Positions 18,401-58,189 of a stretch of 63,862 nt of DNA are shown one piece after another (position 1 is the first letter of the stretch; the number at the start of each line of letters is the position of its first letter). The notes beneath the pieces are model-generated. The model was not told the DNA's origin, searched no databases, and was given only the letters and a program-made list of their open reading frames with translations. Source of the DNA: Chrysemys picta bellii (Eukaryota); assembly GCF_011386835.1 (NCBI RefSeq), contig NC_088807.1, forward strand, positions 19,406,139 through 19,470,000. Reading direction: 5' to 3'. The position numbers and the translations under genes are program-made.

Positions 18401-21400
18401 GGGTTAATGCGAATTTTCTCCCTCCTCTTTGTAACAGCCTTTTATGGACTTGAAAACTTATCACCTCCTCTCTGTTTTCTTTTCTCCAGACTAAACAAAC
18501 CCGTGGTTTTTTCAATCTTCCCTCATAGCTCATGTTTTCTAGACCTGAATCATTTTTGTCGCTCCTCTTTGGACTTTCTCCAGTTTGTCCACAACTTTCC
18601 TGAAATGTGGCACCCAGAACTGGACCCAATACTCCAGTTGAGGCCTAATCATTGCAGAGTAGAGCGGAAGAATTATTTCTCGTGTCTTGCTTACGACACT
18701 CCTGCTAATACAGCCAAGAATGATGTTTGGTTTTTTTGCAACAGCGTGACACTGTTGACTGGTATTTAGCTTGTGATCCACCATGACCCCCAGATCCCTT
18801 TCTGCAGTACTCCTTCCTAGGCCATCATTTCCCAGTTTGTATGTGTGCAACTGATTGGTCCTTCCTAAGTGGAGCGCTTTGCAGGGTCCTTATTGAATTT
18901 CATCCTATTGACTTCAGACCATTTCTCCCGTTTGTCCAGATCATTTTGAATTTTAGTCCTGTCCCCCAAAGCGCTCACAACCCCTCGAAGGGTTATTCAT
19001 GATAGCATTCGGGCCCTGTAATAGGGCCAACCACCGTGTGGAGGGGGCTAGCTGGCCGTCACTTGAGCCACCTTCTCTATTGTTATCTGCTGTCCCTCTT
19101 GAGCGTTGAGGAACCTGGACCATCAGACCTTTGTCTCTGCCCACCAGGCCCTCGAGGAAGGGTGTGAGCATGCAGATTTAGTAGGTACTCCAGATATCTC
19201 CAATACTGTATTGTTCCTCTCTCGTTATGAGCTTTTCTGGCTTTATTGCTGATCTTAATCAAAATCGCCACGGCTTTGCTTTGCCTCCGGTGCGCGTGTC
19301 CTTGCCAGACACCCCGAGGTTCCCACCAAGATTTCGAACTCCTTGGTATTAGCCTGATTCTGGGACAAGAACCTTATTCCCACTGGATCAGTTGGCCATC
19401 AGTACAAGTATTGTTAACGATGAATAGGATCGGGCGACGCTCCCTGCCCGGGTGTGTATGACGGGCCAAACCGATCACCCCGGATCCCGGAGTTGGGGGG
19501 GTGCGGATCCGAATGGGCCAGAATCCAGGGAATAGCTAGAGGCCAGTGAGAGGATGTGTAGGGGCTGCCCCCTAGTGGAGGGTGGGGGAATTGTAGCCTG
19601 TGTGCTGGAAGAAGTGGGGTGTAGCTGTTTTTTCCCGCCCCCCCACACCTAGGACATAGGAAACTCAGATTCATCCCTTCCCCTGGAGCCAGCCATTCCC
19701 TGCCCTGGGGCCAGGTGGGAGCTGGTGCCCCCAGAGGGGAAAAGGCCCCATTCCCCACCCCTGACCTTGGCGATCTTCCTTCCCTCGGCCTCTGTGCAGG
19801 TGCGACTGAGGTCCTGACGCTGCTCAAGTGCTTGCTACGCCCATACAAGTCTGGCCTGCAGCTGCAGAAGCTGCAGGAGTTGCTGCTGGAGAGACACGGG
19901 CTGGATCTGAAGCGGTTTGTCAGCTCCCAGGGCGAGGAGGACGTGCTCGGATTCCTGCAGAGGCGCCTGCCCGCGCTGGAGTACAGGCAGCCGGAGAAGG
20001 GAGCGAAGTGTATCGTCTGGCTGGGGACAGGTACGATGGGGTGTGTGTGGGGGGGAGAACGGGACAATAAATCCCACTCAGAGCTGGGAACAGAACCCAA
20101 GAGTCCTGGCTCATAGCCCCCTGCTCAAACCACTAGGCCCCACTCCCCTCCCAGAACAGGGGAGAGAACCCAGGAGTCCTGACTCCTCCTGGACTGGCTG
20201 TCAGAACTCCATTCCACAGGCCAGAGCCCTGCCCCCAGCTCTCCATGGGGCCATTGCGGGTAGCTGAGACCTGGATTCCTTATTGTCTGACTCTCCGGCT
20301 GTGGGGCAGGCCGCGGGGTTCCCCCCCCAACTCACCCATGGCATAAACCCGCCTTTGCTCCCGTGCATCGTGGGAAAAGTCCAGGCGGGTCCAGAGCGGG
20401 ATACAGGCAGAGCGGTAGCTGCCGTGCATGCTGGGGGATGCCACGTGCCTGTTACCCACCCTGACGGCAGTTTTCCCCCCCCTCCCCCCAGGGCAGAAGA
20501 AAGGCTCTGGATCTTTGCCCCCTGGCAGTGCCCGCCCCTTGCCTGGCTCCAAGAGGTGCCTCCTCCCAACGAATGCCGCGGAGCGCCCGCCCCAACCCGC
20601 CACCGCCTGCCTCAACCCCCGGCTGCCCAGTGCTACCACCAACCGGCCTCTGCTTCCCAGCCTGCCTTCGGCCCGGGAGCCCTTCCGGGCCCCTGCCGCC
20701 CAGGGAAAGCTGGGAAAGTCCCCAGGGGCCAACCCCCGCCTCCCAGCCTGGTTACGGAGCCCACCCCGGCCCACCGGCACCTGCTCAGGCCTACGAACAG
20801 AGGAGGGGACCCACGAGTCCAGGACCAGGCCTGCCAGCGCCCCCTTGGTTCTGCGAGCAGAGGAGGGGACTCAGGAGTTCGGGGCCAGGCCTGCCAGCGC
20901 TCCCTTGGCCCTGCGAGCAGAGGAGGGGATCCAGGAGTCCGGGGCCAGGCAGGCCAGCGCCCCCTTGGTTCTGCAAGCAGAGGAGGGGACCCAGGAGTCC
21001 AGGGCCCAGCCCCCTGAGGACCTGAGGGAGCTGAAGCGGAAGGTGGGGGCCATCCTGGCCGGGCACCCCGGGGGCATGTCCCTCTTCCAGTTCCGTGCCG
21101 CGTACAGCGCCGCCCACCAGCACCCGCTGCCCCTGGGCTGCACGGCCTCCACCAAGCAGCGGCTGGCGCAGATGCCTGACGTGGTGAGGATGCAGGGCTG
21201 CGGGGTGCAGATGCTGCTGCTGCCAGTGGACCCCGACGGACCCCCCAGGGCAGAGCCTGGTACGTAACGGGGGGTTGGGGGGACAGCTGCCTTGCAAGGT
21301 GTGGGGGAGATATTAAGGGGCTGGGCTGGGTCCCCCCCAAGGGATGTGTGATTGGGGGGGGGAGGTCAGGCTGGGTCCCCTAAAGGGGTTGATGGGGCTT

Positions 21401-23197
21401 CCCCCACCCAGATGTTAAGGCCCCGAACCATCGGCCACTCTGTTGTGGGCGTAGGAACAGGGCCAGCCCAGCGCTACGGGCCAGAGGGTCCCGTTGTGAC
21501 TGGCTCGGCTGGTCCTCCTCCTTCCCAGCTCTCCCTGTGGCGGGACGTCTCCCACAATGCCCTGCTGGGACTGCTTGCTGTGTGGCCCAGACCTTCCCAG
21601 AATGCACTGGGGCATAATGCACAGCGGGGCGGGACGTTTCCCAGTATGCATCGCTGGTGCCACGCTGCATCCCATTGGCCCAGGCACGCTGGGCATTTCC
21701 CAGAATGCACTGGGGCAGGTGACGCATCGAGGGTGGGGGCAGGACTCTGTCGCCCCCTGCTGGTTGGTCCGGCTCAGAGGATAAAACCCTCCAGCCGCTG
21801 CCGGCTGAGGGAGCTCCCCCACCAGCCCAAGCAGCGTCTAGTGCTGAGCTTGGCAGGCCCAAACCTCGCGGGCAGGGGCAGGGGCGTGGCTCAGCTGTGG
21901 GGGTGGCACCGGGCTCTGTCAGTGGGATTTAACTGGGTTTGTTTTTCAAGGTCTCGCCCTGTGGATCCCACAAGAAGCTGCTGCCCTGGCTGGGGACACC
22001 GACGACCCATCTGAGCCCCTTCCCACCCTGGCCGAGATCCCTCCCGTCCCAGCAGCTCCCGACCTGACTGGGGACCCCGACACCCCAGCTGAGTCCCCTC
22101 CCACCCTGCCCGACATCCCTCCAGTCCTCACAGCTCCCGACCTGACTGGGGACCCCGACACTCCATCTGAGCCCCCTTCCTTCCCGGTAGCTCCCGACTT
22201 GACTGGGGACCCCGACTCCGCAGCTGAGCTCCCTCCCACCCTGCCCGAGATCCCTCCAGTCCTCACAGCTCCCGACCTGACTGGGGACCCCGACACTCCA
22301 TCTGAGCCCCCTTCCTTCCCGGCAGCTCCCGACTTGACTGGGGACCCCGACTCCGCAGCTGAGCTCCCTCCCACCCTGCCCGAGATCCCTCCAGTCCTCA
22401 CAGCTCCCGACCCGGCTGGGGACCCCAAAGTCCCAGTCAAGCCCCCTCCCACCTTCGTGGCTCCGAGATGGGGGCCGAGCCTCCAGGCCATGCAGCGCCC
22501 AGAGGCTGCCCGACCTGAAGCCAGCTGGGAGTTACCTGACTTGGTGCCCAGCGCCCCCGTGGTTCTCCCAGCATCGGGGCCGTGCAGCAGGTCGTGGCTC
22601 TGGCTTGGGGCAGAGTCCCCCCTCGCCCCGGCTGATCCCGGTGCTGCTGCTCGCCCGGTCGTGTACCCTCCCACCCGGGAGGTCCCCCCGGCCCCCGCTG
22701 CAGCCCCAGAGTCGCCCTCCCTGTGCCCAGCGGCACCGGGGCCACCCCAGGCCCGGCTCAAGCGGGTCCAGTTGGTGCCTCCCTTCCAAGACCACCCTTT
22801 GGCTGGGGATGCCTCTCGGGCACAGCCGGTCCCTAAAGCCGTGGGTCAGAACCAGGGCACATCAGCGGCTGTGGGATCCCCTGTGGGCCCGATCCCTGCA
22901 GATCCATCCACGGGCCAGGCCGTCTCCCCTATTAAGCAGCTCTCAGGGGTGGCCCCGGATCCCCTCCCTCCTCCAGAGGCCAGTGTCTCAGCGACCCCCG
23001 AGCAGGGCTGGCCAGACACCGGGCGCCCTGGTTCAGGTGGAGATATCGGCTCTCCTGTTGACCCCTTGCTGCGCTGCCATCCGGCCCAGCCGGTCCCCTC
23101 TGCAGGGACGACCCCGCCGGGCCCGTGGGCCGGGATCCCCTCGGCCCCACCGGCCCACTCGCCGCCACACCACACCGACACCTGCATTCTCCTATAG
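3485..23197 (+). CDS. Gene A: uncharacterised multi-LOTUS (OST-HTH) protein, 8 intact LOTUS exons plus Pro-rich linkers and C-terminal CaaX (CILL); ~1,600 aa if all exons are joined; start exon not found
   Basis: AG/GT-bounded exons: 3485-3658, 4675-4851, 5577-5756, 8048-8224, 8617-8853*, 9051-9278*, 10883-11014, 11919-12146*, 13753-13980*, 14432-14563, 15196-15423*, 15813-16151*, 16642-16770, 19800-20030*, 20492-21259* and terminal 21951-23197 (*=LOTUS). Every internal exon is phase 1-1, a multiple of 3 and stop-free. AATAAA at 23295-23300. Confidence 0.72.
5085..5340. repeat. 63-bp minisatellite (~4 tandem copies; further single copies near 5940-6050, 8410-8500, 8920-9000)
   Basis: Unit CATGCAGGGAAAATGTGGCCAATGGCCTGTCCATATCCTACCACCCAGCCATCTCTGCCCCAGGG. 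Confidence 0.9.
6087..6313 (+). pseudogene. Decayed LOTUS exon (duplicate of 9051-9278)
   Basis: Near-identical to 9051-9278 but 1 nt shorter (ctacagggctgg vs ctgcaggggctgg), which shifts the frame. The donor is mutated from G|GTGAGG to G|ATGAGG at 6314. Confidence 0.75.
6586..6708. mobile_element. hAT-family MITE
   Basis: TIRs TAGGGTGACCAGAT / ATCTGGTCACCCTA with an 8-bp TSD CTTTCAGG (6578-6585, 6709-6716). Confidence 0.9.
8617..8853 (+). CDS. LOTUS/OST-HTH exon, gene A (79 codons)
   Basis: gtgcag|...|gtgagt. VSHTLRCHPKGMRVKPLTKRLRKEHGVDLLAFSQDGGYQGVVSFLQEMPGIEL fits the LOTUS pattern (L..hP.G..l..L......G.dL.....GY..l..fL..mP.v.l). Confidence 0.82.
9051..9278 (+). CDS. LOTUS/OST-HTH exon, gene A (76 codons)
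   Basis: ttgccag|...|gtgagg. LCSTLGSFPNGLRVFSLRKAMWQRHGVNLEEFSQQQGYLSTLDYLTRLRGIRL. Confidence 0.78.
11919..12146 (+). CDS. LOTUS/OST-HTH exon, gene A (triplicated, copy 1)
   Basis: gtggcag|...|gtaggt. VRDVLGRFPLGLKVGKLKEALRSERGLDLEELSRLRGCGDALHLLRALPHLWL. Confidence 0.8.
12252..12380 (-). mobile_element. Penelope-like retroelement terminal fragment with a degenerate minimal hammerhead ribozyme motif
   Basis: gagtacttgtcgcaccttagagactaacaaatttatt... is the end sequence I recall for turtle PLEs. The minus strand 12321-12364 reads CCGATGAA-GTGGGGTTTAGCCCAC-GAAA-GCTTATGC-AC. Confidence 0.65.
12752..13047. mobile_element. PIF/Harbinger-like non-autonomous element
   Basis: Imperfect TIRs GGGTACGTCCAGACT / AGTGTAGACCAGCCC, a 3-bp AAA flank on both sides and a CpG-rich, partly palindromic interior. 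Confidence 0.6.
13145..13350. mobile_element. Tc1/mariner (Tigger-like) MITE
   Basis: TIRs CACCTCTACCCCG / CGGGGTAGAGGTG flanked by TA on both sides. Confidence 0.8.
13753..13980 (+). CDS. LOTUS/OST-HTH exon, gene A (triplicated, copy 2)
   Basis: Same splice sites and length as 11919-12146; 10 substitutions by eye and no stop. Confidence 0.78.
15196..15423 (+). CDS. LOTUS/OST-HTH exon, gene A (triplicated, copy 3)
   Basis: Same splice sites and length as 11919-12146; intact frame. Confidence 0.78.
15813..16151 (+). CDS. Linker + LOTUS/OST-HTH exon, gene A (113 codons)
   Basis: ctcttcag|...|gtaggg. LIRGALAPYPFGMRVKNLRKLLVGKHGAELEAFSQARGYGDVVSFLRDVPGLTL. Confidence 0.83.
16772..16861. mobile_element. 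hAT-family MITE inserted at a splice donor of gene A
   Basis: TIRs TAGGGTGACCAGA / TCTGGGCACCCTA; 8-bp TSD GAGAGAAG (16764-16771, 16862-16869). Confidence 0.88.
17258..18960 (-). mobile_element. 5'-truncated CR1 LINE, interrupted by a solo LTR
   Basis: ORF 18539..18850 (DLGVMVDHKLNTSQQCHAVAKKPNIILGCISRSVVSKTREIILPLYSAMIRPQLEYWVQFW) is the CR1 ORF2 C-terminus. The 3' end lies near 17258. Confidence 0.9.
17372..18257 (-). mobile_element. Solo LTR (Gypsy-type) inside CR1
   Basis: TA(TG)TC...ATCACA ends with a 5-bp TSD CCTGC (17367-17371, 18258-18262). Related to the 42742-44798 LTR in the opposite orientation. Confidence 0.8.
19800..20030 (+). CDS. LOTUS/OST-HTH exon, gene A (77 codons)
   Basis: ctgtgcag|...|gtacga. 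LLKCLLRPYKSGLQLQKLQELLLERHGLDLKRFVSSQGEEDVLGFLQRRLPALEY. Confidence 0.8.
20492..21259 (+). CDS. Pro-rich + 20-aa repeat + LOTUS exon, gene A (256 codons)
   Basis: ccccag|...|gtacgt. Three to four copies of RAEEGTQESGARPASAPLVL, then LKRKVGAILAGHPGGMSLFQFRAAYSAAHQHPLPLGCTASTKQRLAQMPDVVRMQG. Confidence 0.82.
21951..23197 (+). CDS. Terminal coding exon of gene A: acidic/Pro-rich repeats ending in CaaX (DTCILL*)
   Basis: Acceptor tttttcaag| at 21950; the phase-1 frame is continuous with ORF 22199..23197. Stop TAG 23195-23197; AATAAA 23295. Confidence 0.78.
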
Positions 23198-26100: not shown

Positions 26101-28184
26101 GGTGCTGCCCCCCACCCCAGTGGGATGGGGGGTGACGGACCGGTTAGCCCCAGAGCAAACCTCCAGATCTCGCAGTCCGGCCCTGAACACCCCCTGCACC
26201 ATGGAGGGGTTTGGCCAGGGCTAGGCCCTGCCTCCCCAGCTCTGGGAGTGGAGTGTGGGCTAGTGGTTAGAGCAGGGGGCTGGGAGCCAGGACTCCTGGG
26301 TTCTCTCCCTGGCTCTGGGAGGGGAGTGGGGGCTAGTGGTTAGAGCCGGGGGAGGGTTGGGAGCCAGGAGGCCTGGGTTCCCTTTTGACTCTTTCCTGGC
26401 CTCCTTTGCACAGCCCTGGAGGACCCCCGCTGCCAACTCAGGGGTGATTATTTGGTGCCACCCCAAGGTGAAGTGCCTCCGGCCCCATTCGTCACCTGCC
26501 GCCCAGGTGCCATCCCCGCGCCCGCCCTGTTTGCTCAGCGGGCAGGGTGAGGGCCCAGCTGCTTTCCCCTTTAACTTCCAAGGAAGTTCTGGGCCCAGCT
26601 CCAAGGCCTGCCTGGGGGGCCGGGGGGCGGGGCTGGCAGAGCCCAGGGGGAGGAGCGCAGCCTGGGGAATCATTAACAGGGACAGGACAAAGCGCCGGGC
26701 GGAGGATATGAACCCGGATCCCTGGGGCAGGTAGGTGTGGGTTGCAGTGGTTAGAGCAGGGGGGCTGGGAGCCAGGACTCCTGGGTTCTCTCCCCGGGTC
26801 TAGGAGGGGAGTGGGGGCTGGTGGTTAGAGCAGGGGGACTGGGAGCCAGGACTTGGTTCTTGGCGGGGAATGGGGGCCTGGGCCCCATTATGGCTCTTTC
26901 TTGCTGGTCTTCCCCATTCCTCGATTTTACGAGATTAATCCCTGGCAGGGCTGGTTCTGTTTGTTTGCAGGAAACTATGCCCTGGTGATGAGGTTTTTCC
27001 TTGTTGGGAGTCTGGGGGGGCGGGAAGGGGAGCGTCTATGGTCTATGAGAGAACCCCAGCCACCCGGCTCAAACCACTGGACCCCCACTCCCCTCCCAGA
27101 GCCAGGGATAGAACCCAGGCGTCCTGTTTCCCAGCTCCCTCCTTCTCTAACCACTAGCCCCCACTCCCCTCCCAGAGCCAGGGAGAGAACCCAGGCGTCC
27201 TGGCTCCTAGCCCCCTCCCCCCCGCTCTAACCATTGCACCTCATGCCCTGTCCAGCCCATAGCCCTATAACTCACAGAAATGGAGGTGGGAAACCAAAAA
27301 CACACCCTTTGAATCTAATCTTATCGCGCCTTCCGCTGCAGCGCCCGGCCGTGACCAGGGCGGTGGGGTGTGTCTCTCTTCCCCAAAGCTGGGATCTTGC
27401 CCTGAAGCCTTGTCTCCCTCCCTCTAGGGCCTTCGACCGGCGGAGCCCCCCAGGGCAGGAACCCGATTGCCGAGGGCTGGGTCCCGGGGGCACTCATAGG
27501 TGCAAATTGGCCCAGGGGAGGTCTGTGCCAGCATGACAGAGGCACCCGTCTGTTTTAGATACTCCTCACTGTGGTATCTGGGGAAACTGAGGCACGGAGA
27601 GACCAGGGCCATAGCGCAGCAGGACCTTGAACCCAGGTCTCCCCAGTCTGAGGCTGTCCTTCTGACCCCTAGCCCAGCCTAACGTCTGCCCCCCAGGCCA
27701 GACAGGGGCGGGGTCCAGCTGTGAGGTGCCCCAGGACAGAGACACCCCTTGGTGTGGGGGTGTTTCCCTACAGATGTCGCTACCTCCTAGGACTGCACCG
27801 CTGGAGGTGCAGGGTGCTGCACGTTGGGGCTTGCGGCGAACCGAACGTGGATTAGGCGCCATGCTTTGGACAGGGGACGGGAAGGACTGACGACTGTCAA
27901 CTCTGTCTGGGCAGTGCCCGGCCCGACGGGGCCCCGATCTCGGTGACTCCGTGTCTGGGCAGCGCCCGGCCCGATGGGGCCCCGATCTCGGTGACTCTGT
28001 CTGGGCAGCGCCTGGTGCAGAGAGAGAGGACTGATCATCTGACCTGGTTGCCAGGTTGGTTGGCAGAGAGCAGGGTGTGTTGGGGAGGTGTCTGTGTGTG
28101 TATTTATTTTGTCTGTCTCTCTGATTGTGTGTGTGTGTGTTGGGGGGGTGCCCCCCAACCCCAGCCCCACTCACCACGGGGCCC

Positions 28185-34550
<6,366 letters not shown>

Positions 34551-47238: not shown

Positions 47239-49146
47239 ACAAAACCTTCCCCATCTGAACCTCACACTAATTTCTGATTAGATCTGGGACAACGATCGGG
47301 GGAGAGTTAGTTCCCTGGTAGCTCAGAAAATTGTAGTTTAGGCCAAGTGACTTTGCCCTGCTAGGTTCCAGAGCAGGGATTTTGAGCTTTTTAAATTTGC
47401 AGACCCCTAAGAAGATGTCAAATAGAGAAGCTGACCCCTTGGGAAATCTTAGGCAGAGTCTGGGAACCACCAGGGGGCTGCGGATTGGAGGTTACAAACC
47501 ACTTGTCTCAATCCCCTAAGCCTGGGGCGGCTGCTCTAAAGAGCAGGGTTTTCCATCACGTCATGCATTCCCTGCCCCACTCCACGATGAGAGAAAAAAT
47601 GGCTGCACCAGCAAACAAAAACAAACCCAGGCTGTGAGACTTGCAGCTGCTTGCTGTGTAGACGTCACCTTAGAGCCAGGCTGAGAACGAGCTTGATGGA
47701 TGAGGATCCCACTTCTCACACCATTTGGCACTCAACTATCTCTGAAGCAGCCGGCGTCTCCCTTAGTTGGAGAAGTTGCTCGAGGGAACTCGGTACTGAG
47801 TCAACCCAGTCATCTCCCTGCAGCACACGCTGCCCCAGCGGGCTACGTGAAGGAGCCTGCAGTGATGACTTAGCCTTGCTGGGTTCTAGGTTCTGCAAGC
47901 CAAGGGTCACTCTGCTCTAGCACCTTTAAGAGGCGATTTCCCCACCAGCTCATGGATTTTCCCCTCTGTGATGGGAAAAATGCTGCAGAAAGGAGCAGAT
48001 CATTCAGGAAGCAAATTTTATTGAGAGAACAGCTGGAGATTCATTAAATAAAATATGAGAGGATTCCCCCAGAGGGGTGCGAAAATAAATATTTAAATAA
48101 CATTTTTTCTTTGCTCAGGGCAATGATATGGCTCCGGAGTGGCCACAGACCCTCTCCCGCCAGCCCCCCATAACACTGGGCATGTGCATGCCCCCACCAA
48201 AACAGGGTGGGGGCTAGATCCCCAGAGAATGGAGGGGGTTCTAGATTCCCCAGCCCACAACAAAATGGAGCACACTCTAGATTCTCCACCAGAATCAGTG
48301 CTACATTCCTCAGGCCTCCACATAACTGAGGGGGTTCTAGATTCATCAAAGTGGGACAGGTTCTAGATCCCACCATGTCCTGACCAAATGGAGTGTGTTC
48401 CAGATGCCCCACACCACAATCTAGCCGGTTCTAGATTCCCAGCCCTCCCTCACCACGTGGAATGGGTTCTAGACCCTCCTTTCCCAAACCAAGCGAGTTC
48501 TAGATTCAACAGATTCCCCCAACTGGTGGAGAAGGTTCCAGTTTTCCCACCATGCTGGGGTGGGTTCTAGATCTGCCCCAGCCCCTACTAAAAAAGAGGG
48601 TGGGTTCTGGATCCATCCCAGATGGCTGAATCCCAGAAAGACCCCAGCTTTAAGGGAAGGAGTAAATGTTTCTATGTACTTTCTGCTAGTGAATCCACCT
48701 CTCAGTCAGACCAGTGCTACTGGGAGGGAACTGGCTGCCTCACTTGGAGACAGCTGCCTTCCACCTCTAGGGGGCACTGGAGCCAATCCAGCCCCACACT
48801 GGGGTGCTGCAAGGATATGGGCCATCCACCTACATTCAAACTGGCCCGCTGACATCATGAAGACTCCACCCAACCCCACATCAACCCCTGGGCCCCTTCT
48901 CCTCACCATTTCCCCTTCCCCGCCTGCTCCAGATCCGCTCTCAGCTGGCGATGCGGAAGCCGGGGCAGAATCCGGCTCCCTCTCCCCTAGCAGGAGAGAT
49001 GCTTTTCTAACACGTGGGTGCTTGTCCTACAATCTCCCTCCTATCCAGCCTGACCTAGCCTATTGTGTTGTCCCCACCCATGTCAATTTCACACACACCC
49101 CTCCACGCCAATTTCACACAGACATGGTCAACTCACAATGCCCACC

Positions 49147-52100
49147 TCACAGGAGGACACACTGGTCAGGTTTGTGCTTGGGTGGCTTCCTCTTACTCCC
49201 CATAGGTGGGGGGTGGGGTGGGGAGATACGGGGCAGACGAGGCTCTGGCTTGATGGCCGCCCATGGTGCCCCCCCGTCCTCTCGATGTTTGTAGGGGGAT
49301 GCCAAGCTGGGCTCACCCAGAGGCAGGGGCCTGAAGGGTGGTCTCTCCCTGGGGAAATCTGCGGCACCAGGGATGTCTTGGATGGGGGACCAGGCTGGCT
49401 CAGGGGAGAGCACGGCCATCAGAGGATGGACACCAGACATGGGTCCTGGCAAAGCTGGGGAAAAGGACGGCTCTGGGCTGGGACAGCTTGCAGAGGTGGG
49501 GGCAGAGTTAAGGCCGTAGAGGACAGCATCCGTGGCAACCACATGGTCCAGGCTCAGCGGTGGGGTGGGACCACAGGGGGAACCTGCAGGGGACAGGGAT
49601 ACAGAAGATGCCAGAGGAGAGCTCGGCAGGGAGAGCTCGGCCCCCAGGTCATATGGCACAGTGCCAGCAGCTGGTGTAGCTGTGGCGATGCCCTCCATGA
49701 TGTCTGTCTCTTCAGTGATGGGCCCCATGGATTCATGCTCCCATCTCATCTCTGGTGACCAGGGGGCTGCTGAGACAGCGGGGGATACGGGGAGCTCAGC
49801 TGGGGACCCCGGTGCCATCCTGTGCCCTGGAGGAGGGCTGCAAAGAACAGGGGGCTGCTCTGGGTCTGCAGGAGCCAGGGTGGCCTCTGGGGAGCTGGCA
49901 GAGATGGGAGGAGATGGACAGATCACAGCTGGGGCGGCCAGCGCCACATCGGGGCTGGCAGGAGCGACGACTGCCTCTGGCAGAGATGGGGAGAGACCTA
50001 AACAGACAGGAGAGAAGGGAATTCACTCAGTGACTGGGAAGCTTAGAGAGGGAGAAAGCGCCCCCCACTGAGCCCCCAACCCCATGCTGAGCCCCCGCCC
50101 CGCTCCCTGCAGCACAGCGCCCCCTGCTGAGCCCCCATCCCCTGCTGAGCCCCGCCCCACTCCCCGGAACCCAGCGCCCCTGGCAGTGACCCAGCCTGGC
50201 CCTGCTTAGCTCGATCCCACTCAGGCCCAGCCTGACCCACGGTCTCACAGCTCAAGCCGCAGAGGCCCTCGCTCCCCAGGTTCGATCCCTGGGACGGTCT
50301 TTCACCCCCCACTCACCCCTGACGCCCAGCACGTACCAGTCTCCTCGCTGGGGAGCTCCTGGGGGCAGACCGGGAAGAGCATCGTCTGCACCCCCCAGCC
50401 CTCCACCCTGACCGCCCCCGGCATGGCTGCCAGCTGCTCCTTCACCGAGGCCGAGCTGTCCAGGGGGAAGGGGTGACTGTAGGCGGCGCCGTAGGCCTGG
50501 CGGAAGCGGAAGAGGGAGATGCCCCCGGGGTGGCCCCGCAGGACCCTCGCCACATTCTGCTCCAGCTCGGCCCGCTCGGCCACGGGGGGGTCCAGCAGGG
50601 GGCTGGCCGGGCGGGCGGGACGGGGCAGCCGGCTGGGGGCCAGCGCGGGGCTATTCAGGGCAGCCCCCCGGTACGCATCCAGGCCCAGTGGCTGGTTGGC
50701 GAAGGTCAGCAGGGGCGGCTGCCGGGGGGCGGCCACAGGAAGGCGGGAGCTGGGGAAGTGGCTCAGCGAGACAGCTCGGGGCAGCCAGGCGTTGGCTTGG
50801 TGCCCGGGGGCAGATCCGGCCGGCGGGTGGCCCAGGGGGGCAGCCAGGTGGTGGCAGGAGTTCCAAGGCCTGGGAGCTGGAGGGAGAGGAGAGAAGAGAT
50901 TCCCGGTGAGACGCCGCCCGTCGCCATCCCCGGTAGGATGCACGAGCCCCTCTAGGGGGCGCCGGTCGCATGGAGCCGGACCCCGCTGGGCGATCAGCGG
51001 TTGGGCTTCGGGGGCTGCCACATTGTCATGGGTTTTGCAATGCACTGGCTCTGCCCGGGAGCTGTCGTAAGCCAGCGCAGATTTTGCACTGAGCCGGGGC
51101 TCCCCCTAGGGGCAGCTGGGCCCCATAGCACAAGCCTGGGTCTTTCAGCTCCATCGCTAGAGACTTGGGCAAAGAATCAGGGGTGGGGGGAGGGGGTGTC
51201 CAGGTTCGCTTCCCCAGGCACAGTCACTCCCTGGGACCTGGCGTCCGCATTTAAGGCGGGGGGTTTCCTGCACCCCCTTTGCTGCCTCCTCTGTCCCAGC
51301 CCTGTTTACATGAGGCCCGTTGGTCATTCAGGGTACCCCCGGGCTCCCCATCATTGATTTCACCTGCCCCAAAGCAGAGGCAGGACCATATAGCTTGCCT
51401 TGTTACAGCAAGCTGACGCGCTCCACCCCAGAGGCAGCTGCATTCGCAGGGCTGGACTGTGCCCCCCTGCCAGAAGGCATCAAAGGGAGAGCTGTGGTTA
51501 AGTTTCGCAATCTGTAGGCAAGAGTTATTCTGCTATTTTCAAGGGGGAGAGGGAGAGAATTTGCCAGAGGTAGATGGCAGAACTGGGACCAGAGCCCTGT
51601 TCTGACCACTAGACCCCCACCCCCCTCCTAGAGCTGGGGATGGAACCCAGGAGTCCTGCCCTCTCCCCTCCCCCGCTCTAACCATTAGACACCCACACCC
51701 TTCCCTGAGCCAGGGAGAGGACCCAGGAGTCCTGACATAGACCTGTCCTGAAAATCACTGTTGCGCCTGGTAGTGTAGACAACACCTGTAGCGCTCGCTA
51801 CCCCAATAAAGGGAAGGGTTAGGGACACACAGCCACCACATGCAATTCCCATTTCCCCCAGTAGGGGGCAGCCCCCTACACCCCATGACTATACCTGATT
51901 TAGGAGCCTCTGCCTGCTGCCGTTTGGGTGGCGCCTCCTTGTGGATCTGGGGGTGACGGATGCGTCTCTTGGGGGGCTTGGCCTCCGGCAGCAGGTCGCA
52001 GACTGGGCGCCGGCACCGGACCCACGGTTCCTTGCCCTCCTCGTCCAGGACCACCAGCTCCTTCATGTCACCCAGCAGGTGGTGCAGTGAGCGGTAGCCG

Positions 52101-52904
52101 TGCCGGGGCAGATCCAGGTGCCGGCCATGGTGCTGGTGGAAGAGCCTCCCGAAATCCCACAGGGGGACACCCCCTGGGTGGCTCAACAGTAGCCCCAGCA
52201 CGGCCCCCTGGAGGGTCAGCTGCGAGCCGGGATCCAGTCCCCCCCCCGCAACAGCTGGAAGGAGAAACAGCTCTTGGGGGGCTCAAAGGGCACCAGGTGG
52301 GAGACTTTACCCTTCACTGGCCACCAGGGGGACTCGCCCACAGAACAGCAGAGGGGTGGGCCTGGGCACAGCCAGGGTACCAGGGTAGATGGGCCCCTGC
52401 TCCAAAGTGGGAGAGAAATTCCCTGCACACAGTGGGACTGCAGGTCAGGACTAAGGGTCTCATCAGCAGTGGACAACTGGGGGGGGGGCAGCCCCCCTCC
52501 CCAGAGCCACTGGGCCCCACTCCCCTCCCAGAGCTGGGCATGGAACCCAGGCATCCTGGCTCCCAGCCCCCCCCCCCGCTCTAACCACTAGACCCCACTC
52601 CCCTCCCAGAGCCGGGGATAGAACCCAGGAGTCCTGCTGGCTCCCAGCCCCCGCCCCCCGCTCTAACCACTAGACCCCACTCCCCTCCCAGAGCCAGGGA
52701 TAGAACCCAGGAGTCCTGCTGGCTCCCAGCCCCCGCCCCCCGCTCTAACCACTAGACCCCACTCCCCTCCCAGAGCCAGGGATAGAACCCAGGAGTCCTG
52801 CTGGCTCCCAGCCCCGCCCCCCCACTCTAACCACTAGACCCCACTCCCCTCCCAGAGCCGGGGATAGAACCCAGGCGTCCTGGCTCCCCGGTTTCACCTG
52901 CCAT
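49147..52904 (-). CDS. Gene C: uncharacterised protein with two LOTUS (OST-HTH) domains, a Pro/Ser-rich tail and polybasic CaaX (KRKPPKHKPDQCVLL*); 585 aa, complete
   Basis: Exons 52904-52898 (GAGGCT-ATG-GCA-G|gtgaaa), 52254-51895*, 50876-50337*, 49997-49147 total 1758 nt, in frame; all introns are phase 1. LOTUS1 AVLGLLLSHPGGVPLWDFGRLFHQHHGRHLDLPRHGYRSLHHLLGDMKELVVL. LOTUS2 LEQNVARVLRGHPGGISLFRFRQAYGAAYSHPFPLDSSASVKEQLAAMPGAVRVEG. Confidence 0.82.
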
Positions 52905-52973
52905 AGCCTCCGGCTGGAAGTCCTCCGAGAGCCCGCAGTTTACGGGAAGCAGGTGAGCGCTCCCGTGGGGCCC

Positions 52974-53002
52974 TTTATAGCCTAGGTTCATCGCCCCGCC
53001 CC
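52974..53002 (-). promoter_or_regulatory. Core promoter of gene C (GC box + TATAAA)
   Basis: Minus strand GGGGCGGGG (52994-53002) and TATAAA (52974-52979), 70 nt upstream of a strong-Kozak ATG followed by a GT donor. Confidence 0.6.
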
Positions 53003-54199
53003 CTCCCGGCTCAGGCTGGGCTGCTGTTAACCCTTTGGACGCTGTCACAAAACTGCAAAGTAGGGGCTGGGAGCCAGGACTTCAGGGTTCTGTCCCCGGC
53101 TCTGGGAGGGGAGTGGGGTCTAGTGGTTACAGCGGTCGGGGGGTGAGGGGCTGGGAGTCAGGACACCTGGATTATATCCGCAGCTCTAGGAGGGGAGTGA
53201 GGGCTAGTGGTTTTGGAGGTGGGGGGGGGCTGGGAGCCAGGACTCCGGGGTTTTATTCTCTGCCAATGTTTTGGGCAAGTCATGTTACCTCTCTGCTCAG
53301 CCCGCCTAGATTTAGGTCCCTCTAGTGAGCCACCCACCCTGGTCCGTACTGCACGGTGCCTTGGCTGTCTATTTCCCCTCATGGGGGGGGGGGGGCAGGA
53401 CCATCCCCTCCAGTTAATTCCCCATCCTCAGGTAACCCAAGATACCCCCCACCCTTCGGCACCTAGATTGGTCCATCTGTATCACAATCTTTACAGGGGC
53501 AAAGGTAGAGGGGTAGGAAACGAACCCAGGTGGCCGGGCATGGCATCCCCCCGTGGCAGCCAGTGCCCCCTTGCTCCTCATCCAGCCTGTCCTTTCCTGT
53601 CCAGTTCAGGCACGGTGCGCCCCCCACCCATGCTCCCTCCCTCCCGCCAATAGCTCCCTGTCCAGCCCCCTGCAACCCCCAGCCCATGCACACCTTGTGC
53701 CCAGATTGCTGGGTCACACCCACCCACGCTGCCCCTCCCTGATACCAGTCAGAATTGGCAAGCGCCCGGGTGCAAAGGTGCCCTGGGAGGTTGGGAACTA
53801 GCTGCTGAGAGGAAAAGGGGGGGTGGGGTGCCCAGCCTTCAAAATAGAACCCAGGAGTCCTGGCTTCCAGCATCCCACTTGCTGTAACCACTAGACCCCA
53901 CTCCCCTCCCAGGGATAGAACCCAGGAGTCCTGGCTCCTAGCCCCCCCTGTTCTAACCACTAAACCCCACTCCCTTCCCAGAGCCAGGGATAGAACCCAG
54001 GAGTCCTGGATCCTAGCCCACCTGTTCTAACCCATTAGGGCCCACTACTGCACTAGGGGGTGCTATGCTGTAGGGAGCAGGAGGAGGGGCTCAATAGAGG
54101 GGTGCTCTCCCCAGACAGTCAGCGCTGGCCCTGATACCCCAGTGCACTGCTAGGGGGCGCTGTGCTGCAGGGAGTGGGGCAGAGGTCACTAGGGGGCGC

Positions 54200-57100
54200 T
54201 GTCACGGAGTATTGGGGGACTCAGGGCCCTGCACCCCCGGCTTCCTGCGATTCACCATGACTCTCAGCCAGCCAGTAAAGCAGAAGGTTTATTTGGATGA
54301 CAGGAATACAGTCCAAGACAGGTCTTGCAGGCACAGACAACAGGGACCCCCTCAGTTAGGTCCATCTTGGGGTCCCCGGCCATCCCAGCCCAGCCCCCCT
54401 TGGGAGGTCAGAGCCATCTCTGCCTCCCAGCCATCTCTCCAGCCTGCTTCCCCCACCCTCCTTCAGCGACCCCTCCCACCGCCTTTGTTCAGTTTCCCCG
54501 GGCCCCGGAGTCACCTGGCCTCCAACCCCTTCCTGGGTTCTCATGTTACAAGCTCAGGTATGTTCCCTGGGGCAGACTCCCATCCCCCGATGCAGACCAT
54601 CCTAGCCACACTCCCATCAGCATTCACAGACCACAGTGAGAACAGGCCCAGTTCGTCACATCTCCCCCCTTCGAGACCGAACTGAGCGGGGTCACTTTAG
54701 CCAGTGACCTGGGGAAGTTCGAACCTACCCCCGTTCCCATGGATGCCCCCGCATCCCTCCCATTCCTTGGTGAGAATTACACCAGGCCCCTCCAGTTTCA
54801 CGCCCCCCCTTAGGTCGGGGTGCTTGATGGCACTCGCAGTTCGCATGTGGGAAGGTTTATGTGGCCTGTGCCCTTTTCCCACCCCCACACCTCTGGGGCT
54901 CCAACTGGGCTGTGGTCTTCTCCCAGCGCTCCAGTCTGGAGGTCTGTGCTTTGGGCTCTCTTGGTTCAGAGCCGCCCTTTTAACCTTGGCCACCCTCCGG
55001 AAAGGATCCTCTATGCTGGGCAAGGGTCCTAAAGCTGTTTTCCCCTTGTCCCGGGCCTTCCTCCCCCTCTGACAGGGGTCACAGGATCTGCAGTACTGTC
55101 GGACAGTAACAAAGACCCCAGGCCAGTAAAAGCTCCGTAGCAGCCTCTGCTGGGTACGCCAGATTCCCTGGTGCCCTGAGAGGGGAATATCATGGGCCCG
55201 GCACAGCAGCTGGCGGCGATACTTCTGGGGTACCACCAGCTGCCTCCTGATCCCCCCTGACTCCATTTTCCCTGGGGGAGCCCATTCTCGGTACAGGAAC
55301 CCCTTCTCCCACAGGAACCTTTTCCGGCCACCTCGTCCCATGGTCTGTACCGCATTGAGGTCGGCCAGGTCCCTTATCTTCCGCAAGGAGGGATCTCTCT
55401 GCAACTCGGCCTGGAACTCAGCCGCTGGGACAGGGATGGCCATCTGCTCTTTCTCGCCCGCTGGGTCTGAAGCTGCAGCCTCCCTGAGCCGTGTCCCTGG
55501 GCGTTCCCTCCCCACCAGGTTAGGGTCCTGCGCCTCAGGCAAGGCACCCCCCCAAGGCCAGGGCGCAGTGCCCCTCGCCGGCTCTGACTGCGGGTCACAA
55601 CCAGTGCCTTTTGGGGGTTGCTTGGCCAGTTCTCCAGGTCCCCCCCCCATCAATACCTCAGTGGGCAAATACGGGTGTACCCCCACATCCTTGGGGCCCT
55701 CCTTGGCCCCCCACTTCAGGTGTACCCTTGCCACGGGCACTTTGACTGGTGTTCCGCCCACCCCCGTCAGGGTCAGGTAGGTGTTGGGCACCACCTGATC
55801 TGGGGCCACCACCTCGGGCCGGGCCAGCGTCACCTCTGCGCCCGTATCCCAGTATCCATTGACCTTCCTCCCATCCACCTCCAGGGGAACAAGGTACTCT
55901 CTCCGGAGGGACAGCCCCGCGCCCACCGTATAAACCAAAAACCCTGAGTCTGGGGCATCCAGCCCCCTAGAGGAGCTGGCCTGGAGCTCTCCTCCCTCCT
56001 TAGCAGGTGGTACTCTGCCAGCCCCCCTTCCCTGGGAATGCTGCCTTTCGCCGGGCTGGGTCTCTACCCAGTCAACCCTCTGTGGGTTCGGTCTGCTCAG
56101 TCTGTCCCTGAGCCTAGGGCACTGGGCCCGTATGTGGCCCTTTTGGCCACAGTGGTAGCAGCCCATGTCCCATGGGTCCCCCCGGGTGGGTCGGATGGTC
56201 CTGACGCCGGATGTTCCCCTCTGATGGGGTTTTTCTGTATTTTCCCACGGGGAGGTCCCATGGTGACTCCCTCTCTGCGTTGTGGTGGGACTGTTCCTTT
56301 GGGACTCCTCCCTTCTATCTCCTGACCGGCTCTTTACAAACTCATCGGCCAGCCGGCCTGCATGTCGCAGGTTCTCTGGCTTTCTGTCCACCAACCACAG
56401 CCTCAGGTCGGATGGGCACCGCTCATACAGTTGCTCCAGTACCAGCAGTTTAATCAGGTCCTCCTTCGTCTGGGCCCCACCAGCCCACTTGCTGGCGTAT
56501 CTTTCCATGCGGACGGCTAGTTGCAGATATGAGATCTCAGGGGTTTTATCTTGACTCCGGAACCTTTCCCGGTACATTTCAGGAGTCAGCCCAAACTCAC
56601 GTAGCAGGGCCTTTTTGAATAGTTCGTAGTCCCCTTTCTCTGCCTCTCCCAGTTGGCGGTACAATGCCACGGATTTGGGGTCCAGTAAGGGGGTAAGGAC
56701 CCGGAGTCTGTCCGCGGGATCAACCCGGTGCAGCTCGCAGGCCGTCTCAAAGGCCTCCAGGAAGTCATCCATGTCCTCCCCCTCCTTGCGTGGGGCCAGG
56801 ATGCACTTCTCAAAGCTCCGTGCAGTCCTGGGTCCCCCCTCACTCACCGCAGCCGGGGGTTCGCTGCCCTTCAATCTTGCCAGTTCCAGTTCATGCTGAC
56901 GCTGTCTCTCATTCTCCTGTCTCTGTCTCTCTTTCTCCTCCCGTTCATGCTGTCTCTGTTGTTCACGATCCTCCAGCTCTCTCAGTTTTAGCTCTTTCTC
57001 CCATTCCAGCCAATTCCGCTCCACGGATGCCGAACGTCGCCGGGAGGATCCTCTGCTGGCCGGCGAGCTTCGCCGGGAGGGTCCCCTGCTGGCTGGGGGG

Positions 57101-58189
57101 GTCACGGCGCCTTCGGTATTTGCTGGGCTCCTCCCCACCCTTCCCCTAGGCATAGGAAGGAGGGGTCTCGGGAAGCCCTCAGCAGCCGGCTGACCACTCC
57201 CAGCTGGGACAGACACTGGTGCCTGCGCTGCATTTGCCCGGCTGCTTCCCTGAGGCACAGGGATCAGTTCATTCGCGCGATCTTCCGCCTCCAGCCGGGC
57301 AATGAGCTGTTCTTTGGTGAGCCTCCCAATGCACAGCCCCCTCTGCTTGCACAGCTCCACCAGGTCGCTCTTAAGCCGCTTGGCATACATCTTCCTGCTG
57401 GCCACTCACCGGCCTGTGTGCTCACAGCTCCCCACAGTTCCCAGGGGGCCCCCTAGTGTGCCAGCCCTTCTCGAGGTCACCACCTCTCTGCCAGGGTCGA
57501 GCTGCAGACTCCTCCGCCCCTGGGACCACTCGCTGCGATCCCCCCGGGGGACCCTGTTACTGCAAAAGTCCTTCTCGCTGGTCACACACTCCCAGGGGTA
57601 ATAACCGTCTCTCTCTCACTCTCAGCACGCCTGGTCCCCGTCAATCCCCCTTCGTTTTACTGCTCCCCAGTCACTTACTGCAGGAAGCGCCGTCCACGGG
57701 GTGCAGTAGATCCCACCGCTGCCACCAGTTGTCACGGAGTATTGGGGGACTCAGGGCCCTGCACCCCCGGCTTCCTGCGATTCACCATGACTCTCACCCA
57801 GCCAGTAAAGCAGAAGGTTTATTTGGATGACAGGAATACAGTCCAAGACAGGTCTTGCAGGCACAGACAACAGGGACCCCCTCAGTTAGGTCCATCTTGG
57901 GGTCCCCGGCCATCCCAGCCCAGCCCCCCTTGGGAGGTCAGAGCCATCTCTGCCTCCCAGCCATCTCTCCAGCCTGCTTCCCCCATCCTCCTTCAGCGAC
58001 CCCTCCCACCGCCTTTGTTCAGTTTCCCGGGCCCCGGAGTCACCTGGCCTCCAACCCCTTCCTGGGTTCTCATGTTACACGCTCAGGTATGTTCCCTCGG
58101 GCAGACTCCCATCCCCCGATGCAGACCATCCTAGCCACACTCCCATCAGCATTCACACACCACAGTAAGAACAGGCCCAGTTCGTCACA
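54200..58189 (-). mobile_element. Gmr1-like (Ty3/Gypsy) LTR retrotransposon, internally deleted (non-autonomous)
   Basis: LTRs 57730-58189 and 54200-54660 (TG...CA, ~7 differences by eye); TSD GGCGC (54195-54199, 58190-58194). PBS TGGTGGCAGCGGTGGGAT (57710-57727) is complementary to the tRNA-Leu 3' end. PPT AAGGGGGAGA at 54661-54670. Confidence 0.95.
54697..57390 (-). CDS. Gag-protease-truncated integrase ORF of the Gmr1-like element (897 aa from ATG)
   Basis: N-terminal SAP/HeH-like motif, coiled coil, SCAN-like capsid region (TPEMYRERFR...LLVLEQL...KPENLRHAGRLADEF), CCHC knuckle (CYHCGQKGHIRAQC), protease DTGAEVT and integrase Zn domain (HDIPLSGH...YCRSCDPC). No DDE core, RT or RNase H. 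Confidence 0.9.
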   Translation of the reverse strand: MYAKRLKSDLVELCKQRGLCIGRLTKEQLIARLEAEDRANELIPVPQGSSRANAAQAPVSVPAGSGQPAAEGFPRPLLPMPRGRVGRSPANTEGAVTPPASRGPSRRSSPASRGSSRRRSASVERNWLEWEKELKLRELEDREQQRQHEREEKERQRQENERQRQHELELARLKGSEPPAAVSEGGPRTARSFEKCILAPRKEGEDMDDFLEAFETACELHRVDPADRLRVLTPLLDPKSVALYRQLGEAEKGDYELFKKALLREFGLTPEMYRERFRSQDKTPEISYLQLAVRMERYASKWAGGAQTKEDLIKLLVLEQLYERCPSDLRLWLVDRKPENLRHAGRLADEFVKSRSGDRREESQRNSPTTTQRGSHHGTSPWENTEKPHQRGTSGVRTIRPTRGDPWDMGCYHCGQKGHIRAQCPRLRDRLSRPNPQRVDWVETQPGERQHSQGRGAGRVPPAKEGGELQASSSRGLDAPDSGFLVYTVGAGLSLRREYLVPLEVDGRKVNGYWDTGAEVTLARPEVVAPDQVVPNTYLTLTGVGGTPVKVPVARVHLKWGAKEGPKDVGVHPYLPTEVLMGGGPGELAKQPPKGTGCDPQSEPARGTAPWPWGGALPEAQDPNLVGRERPGTRLREAAASDPAGEKEQMAIPVPAAEFQAELQRDPSLRKIRDLADLNAVQTMGRGGRKRFLWEKGFLYREWAPPGKMESGGIRRQLVVPQKYRRQLLCRAHDIPLSGHQGIWRTQQRLLRSFYWPGVFVTVRQYCRSCDPCQRGRKARDKGKTALGPLPSIEDPFRRVAKVKRAALNQESPKHRPPDWSAGRRPQPSWSPRGVGVGKGHRPHKPSHMRTASAIKHPDLRGGVKLEGPGVILTKEWEGCGGIHGNGGRFELPQVTG

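What the first reader, a model, noticed from the sequence alone, without database searches (positions are those of the whole stretch)
49147..49200. Gene C independently ends in polybasic + CVLL*
GSKRKPPKHKPDQCVLL* is a Lys/Arg cluster plus CaaL, the two-signal membrane anchor typical of Rho/Cdc42 proteins (Cdc42 ends CVLL). The terminal exons of A and C are otherwise hard to align, so keeping C-a-a-L-stop in both points to purifying selection. Gene C is the cleanest test case: a complete 585-aa model with TATA, Kozak ATG and four exons.
Basis: partly seen in the sequence, partly recalled or inferred. Interest (0 to 1): 0.85.

Follow-up and report, generated by a model that had tools for sequence, protein, structure and literature searches.

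The report
Conserved prenylation box on LOTUS-domain protein
A transcribed painted-turtle gene for a protein with two LOTUS domains (a fold typical of germ-cell RNA-granule proteins) ends in a lipid-attachment signal, CVLL, and relatives from sharks to turtles keep this signal, so the family is probably lipid-anchored, which has not been described for LOTUS proteins.

Summary
On the minus strand, 49147-49200 encodes GSKRKPPKHKPDQCVLL-stop. It closes a four-exon, 585-aa gene. All three introns are confirmed exactly by spliced transcript contigs from four public runs. NCBI predicts the same protein in Chrysemys picta bellii under the automatic name 'proline-rich protein 36-like'.

The protein is not a GTPase. 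It has two LOTUS/OST-HTH domains and a roughly 290-residue tail predicted to be disordered.

- All 10 turtle orthologues end in a polybasic stretch plus CVLL.
- At least 12 turtle species' orthologues of 'gene A' end TD[TS]-C-[VI]-[ILF]-[LI].
- Most full-length relatives in squamates, alligators, frogs, lungfish, coelacanth and sharks end C-x-[IL]-L.

The variation pattern matches geranylgeranyltransferase-I rules: a1 is free, a2 is I or L, and X is L. CVLL, CVIL and CIIL are fully geranylgeranylated in a published reporter assay.

Two corrections apply. The two ends are homologous, not independent. The polybasic patch is specific to the gene C lineage.

Prenylation itself, membrane targeting and the expressing tissue remain untested. 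I found no literature on this family and saw no mammalian member.

The parts
49150..49161 (-). CVLL codons (TGT GTC CTC CTG), the CaaX box. Cys582 is the predicted geranylgeranyl acceptor.
   Evidence: Invariant as protein in 10 turtles. Only one synonymous difference (CTC/CTT) in six species and in a run X2 allele.
49147..49149 (-). Stop codon TGA directly after CVLL.
   Evidence: Invariant in six turtles.
49162..49200 (-). Polybasic stretch GSKRKPPKHKPDQ directly before the Cys (5 K/R plus 1 H in 13 residues).
   Evidence: Enrichment P = 7.5e-5 against the rest of the tail. 4-6 K/R are kept in all 10 turtle orthologues.
49147..49997 (-). Exon 4 of gene C: a Pro/Ala/Ser-rich tail (283 aa including the split first codon) ending in the CaaX box and stop.
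   Evidence: Splice acceptor ...tttag|GT. Junction 49997|50337 seen in four runs. AF2 pLDDT is mostly below 50. Composition P 22%, A 13%, S 12%.
50337..50876 (-). Exon 3: linker plus the second LOTUS domain (about 50338-50607).
   Evidence: Profile A1 hits TDRD7/TDRD5/MARF1/Oskar LOTUS chains. 21 of 27 members match PF12872. AF2 pLDDT is 80 and the top Foldseek hits are TDRD7, Tejas and Oskar LOTUS. Junction 50876->51895 seen in two runs.
51895..52254 (-). Exon 2: the first LOTUS/OST-HTH domain.
   Evidence: Pfam PF12872, E = 2.7e-8. pLDDT 85-94. Junction 52254->52898 seen in two runs.
52898..52938 (-). Exon 1: 5'UTR plus the conserved ATG (52904-52902) and 7 coding nucleotides. The upstream limit is not mapped.
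   Evidence: Contigs reach at least 41 nt past the junction. The MA[AV]VAG start is conserved in orthologues.
52974..52979 (-). TATAAA about 70 nt upstream of the conserved ATG. It lies downstream of the ATG used by NCBI (52991-52989).
   Evidence: Direct reading. The N-terminus of P0083 is shown. Promoter use was not tested.
48017..48022 (-). First AATAAA downstream of the stop (1.1 kb), a candidate poly(A) signal.
   Evidence: Contigs continue at least to 49000. Poly(A) use was not tested.
21951..23197 (+). Terminal exon of the paralogue 'gene A' (LOC101932420). It holds a repeat-rich disordered tail ending ...HHTDTCILL-stop (CILL codons 23183-23194).
   Evidence: Orthologues in at least 12 turtle species end C-[VIR]-[ILF]-[LI]. 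The exon is held at 0.84-0.94 of sampled words in small, probably RNA, runs of several studies.
20492..21259 (+). Gene A exon homologous to gene C exon 3 (linker plus the LOTUS domain nearest the tail), with the same phase-1 introns.

Best explanation
The last four residues of gene C, Cys-Val-Leu-Leu, are a functional CaaX box. I infer that protein geranylgeranyltransferase type I attaches a C20 isoprenoid to Cys582. By analogy with other CaaX proteins, the -VLL tripeptide would then be clipped and the new C-terminus methylated. The lipid, helped in the gene C lineage by the adjacent KRK..K.K basic patch, would hold the end of a roughly 290-residue disordered tail on the cytosolic face of a membrane. 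That would place the two N-terminal LOTUS domains (winged-helix modules that bind RNA or DEAD-box helicases in other proteins) at a membrane surface.

Shown here: the motif, the transcript, the LOTUS folds, the predicted disorder of the tail, and deep conservation of C-x-[IL]-L at the extreme C-terminus of the family.

Inferred: the lipid transfer itself, which membrane is targeted, and what the LOTUS domains bind.
For: 1. Motif and model are real and expressed.
2. CVLL is invariant in 10 turtle orthologues. At nucleotide level it is a conservation island with only a synonymous change, flanked by variable codons and a variable 3'UTR (the run X2 allele).
3. The paralogue gene A keeps C-[VI]-[ILF]-[LI] across the turtle species found, with CRLL in Pelodiscus.
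4. In an exhaustive HMMER search the family is only 47 clusters, and 26 of them end C-x-[IL]-L. The others are mostly fragments or short models. The binomial P is about 1e-57 at the window's background rate.
5. Among 46 distinct family tails ending C-x-x-x, X = L in 43, a2 = I/L in 43, and a1 is free (V, I, L, C, R, S, G, N, F). This is the GGTase-I recognition pattern (CaaL/I/M). CVLL, CVIL and CIIL were completely geranylgeranylated by human GGTase-I in a reporter (PMC11152559).
6. The box sits at the end of a tail predicted to be disordered (pLDDT below 50), as prenyltransferase substrates need.
7. A bird locus has an unannotated open frame ending ...KPPKGPERCTLL-stop just downstream of the truncated gene model. 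It is the only such frame in 20.9 kb.
Against: - No biochemical evidence of lipidation or membrane binding exists for any member.
- Salamander (3 species), gar, arowana, manta and Bombina models lack the box. No CaaL frame lies within 10 kb downstream in gar. The signal is therefore either dispensable in some lineages or those models are incomplete.
- Most members, including gene A, have little or no basic patch, so the 'two-signal' logic does not hold for the whole family.
- A conserved Asp two residues before the Cys (32 of 46 tails) has no known role in prenylation. It may point to an additional or different reader of the C-terminus.
- A Mauremys model (P0091) joins gene C exons 1-3 to a downstream LOTUS exon, so isoforms without the box may exist.
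Confidence: 0.75

Rival explanations
1. The box is prenylated, but the KRKPPKHK patch acts mainly as a nuclear localisation signal, as in lamins (NLS plus CaaX). The protein would then be tethered at the nuclear envelope or perinuclear face rather than at the plasma membrane. Alternatively, the prenyl group serves as a protein-protein contact, as in Spindly or PEX19, rather than as a membrane anchor.
For: K-R-K-x-x-K-x-K fits a monopartite NLS pattern (direct reading). Two-LOTUS plus IDR proteins of C. elegans promote perinuclear granules (PMC8616582 and PMC8331183, listed). Prenyl-dependent protein binding is documented for Spindly and PEX19 (abstracts). Most family members lack the basic patch that plasma-membrane targeting usually needs.
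Against: Nothing here discriminates between destinations. The basic patch directly abuts the CaaX box, as in Rho/Ras hypervariable regions.
Confidence: 0.12
2. The conserved C-terminus is read by something other than a prenyltransferase. Candidates are a class II PDZ-type ligand, a C-terminal degron, or a Cys used only for palmitoylation or redox or metal contacts.
For: The hydrophobic C-terminus (-V-L-L, -I-I-L) superficially fits PDZ class II. The conserved Asp at -2 from the Cys (32 of 46 tails) is not explained by prenylation rules.
Against: PDZ class II needs a hydrophobic residue at position -2 and tolerates variation at -1. Here position -2 (a1) is the free one (V, I, L, C, R, S, G, N) and position -1 (a2) is fixed as I/L. 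The Cys at -3 is invariant, and its fixed distance of exactly four residues from the end is kept in 44 of the 46 distinct tails. These are the CaaX rules, not PDZ or degron rules.
Confidence: 0.08
3. The ending is a neutral accident of a fast-evolving, low-complexity tail, and the similarity between genes A and C only reflects recent duplication.
For: Turtle genomes evolve slowly. Across turtle orthologues the last 17 residues are not more conserved than the tail average (0.80 against 0.75).
Against: The motif persists where the tails no longer align: sharks, coelacanth, lungfish, frogs, squamates and alligators. The background rate of such ends is about 0.1%. The substitution inside the box is synonymous only, while the neighbouring codons and the 3'UTR vary.
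Confidence: 0.02

Closest known systems
Rho/Cdc42/Rap-type hypervariable tails (polybasic region plus CaaL; Cdc42 ends CVLL)
   Same: The CaaX tetrapeptide is identical (CVLL). X = Leu directs GGTase-I. A Lys/Arg cluster sits directly upstream in the gene C lineage. The box lies at the end of a flexible segment.
   Different: There is no GTPase domain (Pfam finds only OST-HTH). The anchor sits on a roughly 290-residue disordered tail of a LOTUS protein. The paralogue and most relatives lack the basic patch. A conserved Asp lies two residues before the Cys.
TDRD5 / TDRD7 (Tejas / Tapas) LOTUS domains
   Same: These are the best sequence-profile and fold matches of the exon 3 domain (2ly1, 3s93, 3rco, 8wxs). 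Their architecture also has several LOTUS domains followed by long linkers.
   Different: There are no Tudor domains. The predicted LOTUS domains show no C-terminal alpha5 extension, the feature that defines Vasa-binding eLOTUS (PMC5458760; models). TDRD5 and TDRD7 are not reported to carry a CaaX box (my own knowledge, not tested here).
MARF1 (tandem minimal LOTUS domains)
   Same: The long relatives, including gene A, carry many tandem LOTUS-like modules (OST-HTH and DUF7515). The predicted domains are of the minimal type.
   Different: Pfam detects no NYN nuclease or RRM. The tail-proximal LOTUS domain is distinctive: a single-sequence HMMER search retrieves only 47 clusters. The CaaX end is also absent from MARF1.
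C. elegans MIP-1/EGGD-1 and MIP-2/EGGD-2 (two LOTUS domains plus disordered regions)
   Same: Same parts list as gene C: two LOTUS domains separated and followed by disordered regions. Those proteins position germ granules at the nuclear periphery (PMC8331183, PMC8616582).
   Different: No detectable sequence relationship was found here. The worm proteins are not reported to be lipid-anchored. Germline expression of the turtle gene is not shown.

Membership tests
CaaX prenylation substrates (GGTase-I class) | Cys exactly four residues from the C-terminus | tested here: met
   CVLL-stop. The transcript contig reads through it.
CaaX prenylation substrates (GGTase-I class) | a2 aliphatic and X = Leu (or I/M/F) for GGTase-I | tested here: met
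   In gene C, a2 = L and X = L. Family-wide, a2 = I/L in 43 of 46 tails and X = L in 43 of 46. CVLL, CVIL and CIIL are fully geranylgeranylated in a reporter (PMC11152559).
CaaX prenylation substrates (GGTase-I class) | Flexible, accessible segment upstream of the box | tested here: met
   AF2 pLDDT is below 50 over nearly all of the last 290 residues. The tail is Pro/Ala/Ser-rich.
CaaX prenylation substrates (GGTase-I class) | Covalent isoprenoid on the Cys | not testable with these tools
   Needs metabolic labelling, an in vitro GGTase-I assay or mass spectrometry.
Polybasic-prenyl two-signal membrane anchors | Cluster of Lys/Arg within about 15 residues upstream of the CaaX box | tested here: met
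   Gene C has 5 K/R in the 13 residues before the Cys, and 4-6 are kept in 10 turtles. The feature is not met in gene A or in most other family members (0-2 K/R).
Rho/Cdc42 small GTPases | Ras-superfamily G domain | tested here: not met
   Pfam scans of the exons and of full-length orthologues return only OST-HTH and DUF7515.
LOTUS/OST-HTH domain proteins | Winged-helix LOTUS fold with a match to PF12872 | tested here: met
   Exon 2: PF12872, E = 2.7e-8. Exon 3 domain: profile hits to TDRD7 and TDRD5 LOTUS chains, 21 of 27 relatives match PF12872, and Foldseek gives TDRD7, Tejas and Oskar at TM 0.7-0.87.
eLOTUS subclass (Vasa-binding) | C-terminal alpha5 helix extension after the LOTUS core | tested here: inconclusive
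   No helix is predicted after the last strand of either domain, and pLDDT drops there. This is a prediction only, from shallow alignments.
TDRD5/TDRD7 and MARF1 | Tudor domains (TDRD) or NYN plus RRM (MARF1) | tested here: not met
   None detected by Pfam in gene C exons or in six full-length relatives.

The most novel reading that the evidence does not exclude
An old gnathostome family of LOTUS-domain scaffold proteins is geranylgeranylated at its C-terminus. It is present from sharks to turtles and at least one bird, was not seen in mammals, and carries 2 to more than 10 LOTUS modules. It would tether RNA or RNA-helicase assemblies (germ-granule or nuage-like condensates) to a membrane surface. 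That would make it the first lipid-anchored LOTUS protein and a direct physical link between a 'membraneless' RNP compartment and a membrane.
Probability: 0.3. Interest if true: 0.78.

Novelty: new variant of a known kind. Interest (0 to 1): 0.62.

Why it matters
LOTUS-domain proteins (Oskar, TDRD5/7, MARF1, worm MIP/EGGD) organise germline RNA granules. As far as I could find, none is known to be lipid-modified.

A family-wide, deeply conserved CaaL box would mean that some vertebrates fix a multi-LOTUS scaffold to a membrane. This suggests how RNP granules could be positioned on organelle or cell membranes.

The family is annotated only as 'uncharacterized' or by composition-driven misnomers such as 'proline-rich protein 36-like', 'RpfA-like' and 'mucin-7-like'. 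It was not seen in mammals in an exhaustive profile-free search, which may explain why it has escaped study.

The claim can be tested directly with a Cys-to-Ser mutant and a prenyl probe. The comparative result also flags many truncated gene models whose true 3' ends can be found by looking for the box.

Tried and rejected
- **Literature.** No paper holds 'LOTUS domain' together with 'prenylation'. Among the 15 top-ranked papers holding two of OST-HTH/LOTUS/CAAX/geranylgeranylation/farnesylation, none concerns a LOTUS-domain protein. Six LOC identifiers of family members gave no hit. 'Proline-rich protein 36-like' plus 'turtle' gave no hit.
- **Search for Xenopus or other anuran relatives.** A search with Pelobates P0035 found only Pelobates fuscus and Ascaphus, both with the box. 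Presence in Xenopus stays open.
- **Looking for missed terminal exons.** Gar: no CaaL frame on the gene's strand within 10 kb. Two turtle look-ups were not on record.
- **Protein-level conservation of the last 17 residues within turtles.** It does not stand out from the tail average (0.80 against 0.75; rank 54 of 267 windows). Turtles are too similar for this test. The nucleotide-level contrast and the deep comparison carry the argument instead.
- **A third CaaL exon for the minus-strand LOTUS exons at 37.4-40.3 kb ('gene B').** None is in the window.
Full report
**1. The observation**

The reverse complement of window 49147-49200 reads GSKRKPPKHKPDQCVLL followed by TGA. The exons are:
- 52898-52904 (ATGGCAG)
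- 51895-52254
- 50337-50876
- 49147-49997

Every intron is GT..AG, all are in phase 1, and the product is 585 aa. The ending is not a chance one. Among 2070 open frames of at least 15 codons in the window, four end C-x-[ILVFM]-[LIMF]. Two are the long terminal exons of the two LOTUS genes (291 and 449 codons). The other two are 28- and 34-codon scraps. The 13 residues before the Cys hold 5 K/R, against 3.8% K/R in the rest of the tail (P = 7.5e-5).

**2. The gene is real and is expressed with this 3' end**

Logan contigs of four runs, from two organism labels and three studies, were laid on 49000-53100. They give exactly the three predicted junctions:
- 49997|50337, in all four runs
- 50876->51895, in two runs
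- 52254->52898, in two runs

Each junction shows CT..AC on the + strand, so the transcript is on the minus strand. One 1741-nt contig joins exon 2, exon 3 and exon 4 and runs through the stop into the 3'UTR. A variant contig in run X2 carries 49153 G>A. Read, this is a synonymous Leu change (CTC to CTT) inside CVLL, next to nonsynonymous changes at the codons for Gln (-5) and a Pro.

NCBI's Chrysemys picta bellii protein P0083 ('proline-rich protein 36-like', 614 aa) is 100% identical to the model over all 585 residues. This identifies the genome.

**3. What the protein is**

- Exon 2 matches Pfam OST-HTH/LOTUS (E = 2.7e-8).
- Exon 3 had no Pfam hit on its own. A 27-sequence profile of its conserved part (A1) hits the LOTUS domains of TDRD7 (E = 2e-8), TDRD5, Tejas, MARF1 and Oskar among solved structures. 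21 of the 27 relatives match PF12872.
- The AlphaFold model of that part (pLDDT 80) has as its best Foldseek matches TDRD7, Tejas and Oskar LOTUS structures (TM up to 0.87).
- A full-length model shows two confident LOTUS folds. Everything else, including the last roughly 290 residues, is below pLDDT 50. That tail is 22% Pro.
- Neither domain shows the C-terminal helix that defines Vasa-binding eLOTUS domains (PMC5458760). This rests on prediction only.
- There is no GTPase, Tudor, NYN or RRM domain.

**4. Surroundings**

The window holds many more LOTUS-type exons. Its last three exons (19800-20030, 20492-21259, 21951-23197) have the same phase-1 introns as gene C and end ...HHTDTCILL-stop.

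Between the two genes lie a FAM83-type (SACK1) gene with a nested Ly6/SPACA4-like frame.

**5. The refutation test: orthologue C-termini**

An exhaustive HMMER search with exon 3 found only 47 clusters among 1.84 billion representatives. 26 of them end C-x-[IL]-L, and most of the rest are fragments or short models.

Named members come from the following groups:
- turtles, alligators, many squamates and a bird
- frogs and salamanders
- lungfish and coelacanth
- sharks and a ray
- gar and arowana

The 15 clusters I could not look up are all closest to reptile members (14) or a teleost member (1). No mammal appeared.

Results for the two genes:
- Gene C orthologues in 10 turtles, including the side-necked Emydura, all end SK[RKG]K.xK.K.[DN]xCVLL.
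- Gene A orthologues in at least 12 turtle species end SPP[RH]xTD[TS]C[VI][ILF][LI], with CRLL in Pelodiscus.
- Two more frogs end CCIL and CSIL.

Over 46 distinct family tails ending C-x-x-x:
- X is Leu in 43.
- a2 is Ile or Leu in 43.
- a1 is free (V, I, L, C, R, S, G, N, F).
- Asp lies two residues before the Cys in 32 of 46.
- A K/R/H and a Pro run lie further upstream.

The two ends in the window are therefore homologous, not independent.

In six turtles, 14 of the 15 nucleotides of CVLL-stop are invariant and the only change is synonymous. The three or four codons before are variable, and only 18% of columns are invariant in the first 50 nt of the 3'UTR.

In the sparrow Ammospiza, the annotated 291-aa model lacks the box. 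An open frame ending ...KPPKGPERCTLL-stop lies 580 nt downstream on the same strand. It is the only such frame in 20.9 kb.

**6. Mechanism**

Free a1, aliphatic a2 and Leu at X is the recognition pattern of geranylgeranyltransferase I. It is not that of a class II PDZ ligand, where position -2 must be hydrophobic and -1 is free. In a humanised-yeast reporter, CIIL, CTIL, CVIL and CVLL were completely geranylgeranylated by human GGTase-I (PMC11152559). Three of these (CVLL, CVIL, CIIL) are the dominant variants in this family.

I therefore take Cys582 to be geranylgeranylated. The neighbouring basic patch would add electrostatic membrane affinity in the gene C lineage. The two LOTUS domains would be held at a membrane on a long flexible tether.

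The lipid transfer, the target membrane and the LOTUS ligands are inferences. The basic patch could equally be an NLS, in a lamin-like arrangement. The prenyl group could also serve protein binding rather than membrane insertion.

**7. Limits**

- Salamander, gar, arowana, manta and Bombina models lack the box. Gar has no candidate within 10 kb.
- Most members, gene A included, have 0-2 basic residues near the box.
- A Mauremys model (P0091) links gene C exons 1-3 to a downstream LOTUS exon, so box-less isoforms are possible.
- The tissue of expression is unknown because run labels are coded. Gene A's terminal exon is held at 0.84-0.94 by a largely different set of small runs than gene C, which hints at different expression.

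**8. Novelty**

CaaX prenylation and LOTUS proteins are each well known. I found no report of the combination, and the family carries only automatic names. I rate it a new variant of a known kind. It has a clear, cheap experimental test.

Noticed in passing
window 37250-40331 (minus strand): Three further LOTUS-type exons ('gene B') lie downstream of gene C on the same strand. The window holds no tail-proximal LOTUS exon or CaaL terminal exon for them. A Mauremys mutica model (P0091) splices gene C exons 1-3 onto the homologue of the 39939-40331 exon, so C and B may be joined in some transcripts, or the model is chimeric.
   Followed up: partly
window 21990-22420 (+), and proteins P0118-P0123: The gene A terminal exon carries tandem Pro/Asp-rich repeats (PDLTGDPD...). 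Older NCBI Chrysemys isoforms of LOC101932420 stop inside these repeats (...APDLTWGPRLRS). The window reads through to CILL and is 96% identical to Malaclemys. This is probably a frameshifted model or an older assembly error.
   Followed up: partly
Orthologues start at the downstream ATG (52904).
   Followed up: partly
window 54697-57405 (minus strand): A 902-aa open frame with SCAN, CCHC zinc knuckle and integrase H2C2 zinc-binding domains but no reverse transcriptase hit. It is a gag-pol-derived retroelement remnant or a domesticated gene just upstream of gene C.
   Followed up: no
window 28125-33265 (+) and 30958-31527 (+): A FAM83-type gene (SACK1 domain split over two exons) with a Ly6/uPAR (SPACA4-like) open frame between its exons. 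An Ig-domain frame lies at 61448-61987 (-). In the sparrow the LOTUS gene lies next to NDUFA3. From my own knowledge, the human FAM83E/SPACA4 and NDUFA3 genes lie on 19q13, so the region may be syntenic with it (not tested here).
   Followed up: partly
L001 about 11270-11455 (+), Ammospiza caudacuta: An unannotated 61-codon frame ending ...KPPKGPERCTLL-stop lies 580 nt after the end of the 291-aa 'proline-rich protein 36-like' model. It is the likely true 3' end of the bird gene.
   Followed up: partly
window 51600-51740 and 52540-52890: SINE-like repeats (ggactcctgggttc...ggtctagtggttagagc) sit in introns 1 and 2 of gene C. Three near-identical copies lie in tandem in intron 1. They attract very high contig depth from unrelated transcripts in all four runs.
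   Followed up: no
runs X1-X4 compared with X22, X25-X35: Runs that hold spliced gene C transcripts are largely different from those that hold gene A's terminal exon. Run X22, for example, holds 0.01 of the gene C words and 0.89 of the gene A words. The two paralogues seem to be expressed in different samples.
   Followed up: no
family tails (proteins P0010-P0126): An Asp two residues before the prenyl Cys is kept in 32 of 46 distinct tails, within a PPP-[KRH]-x-x-D-x-C motif. CaaX rules do not explain it.
   Followed up: no
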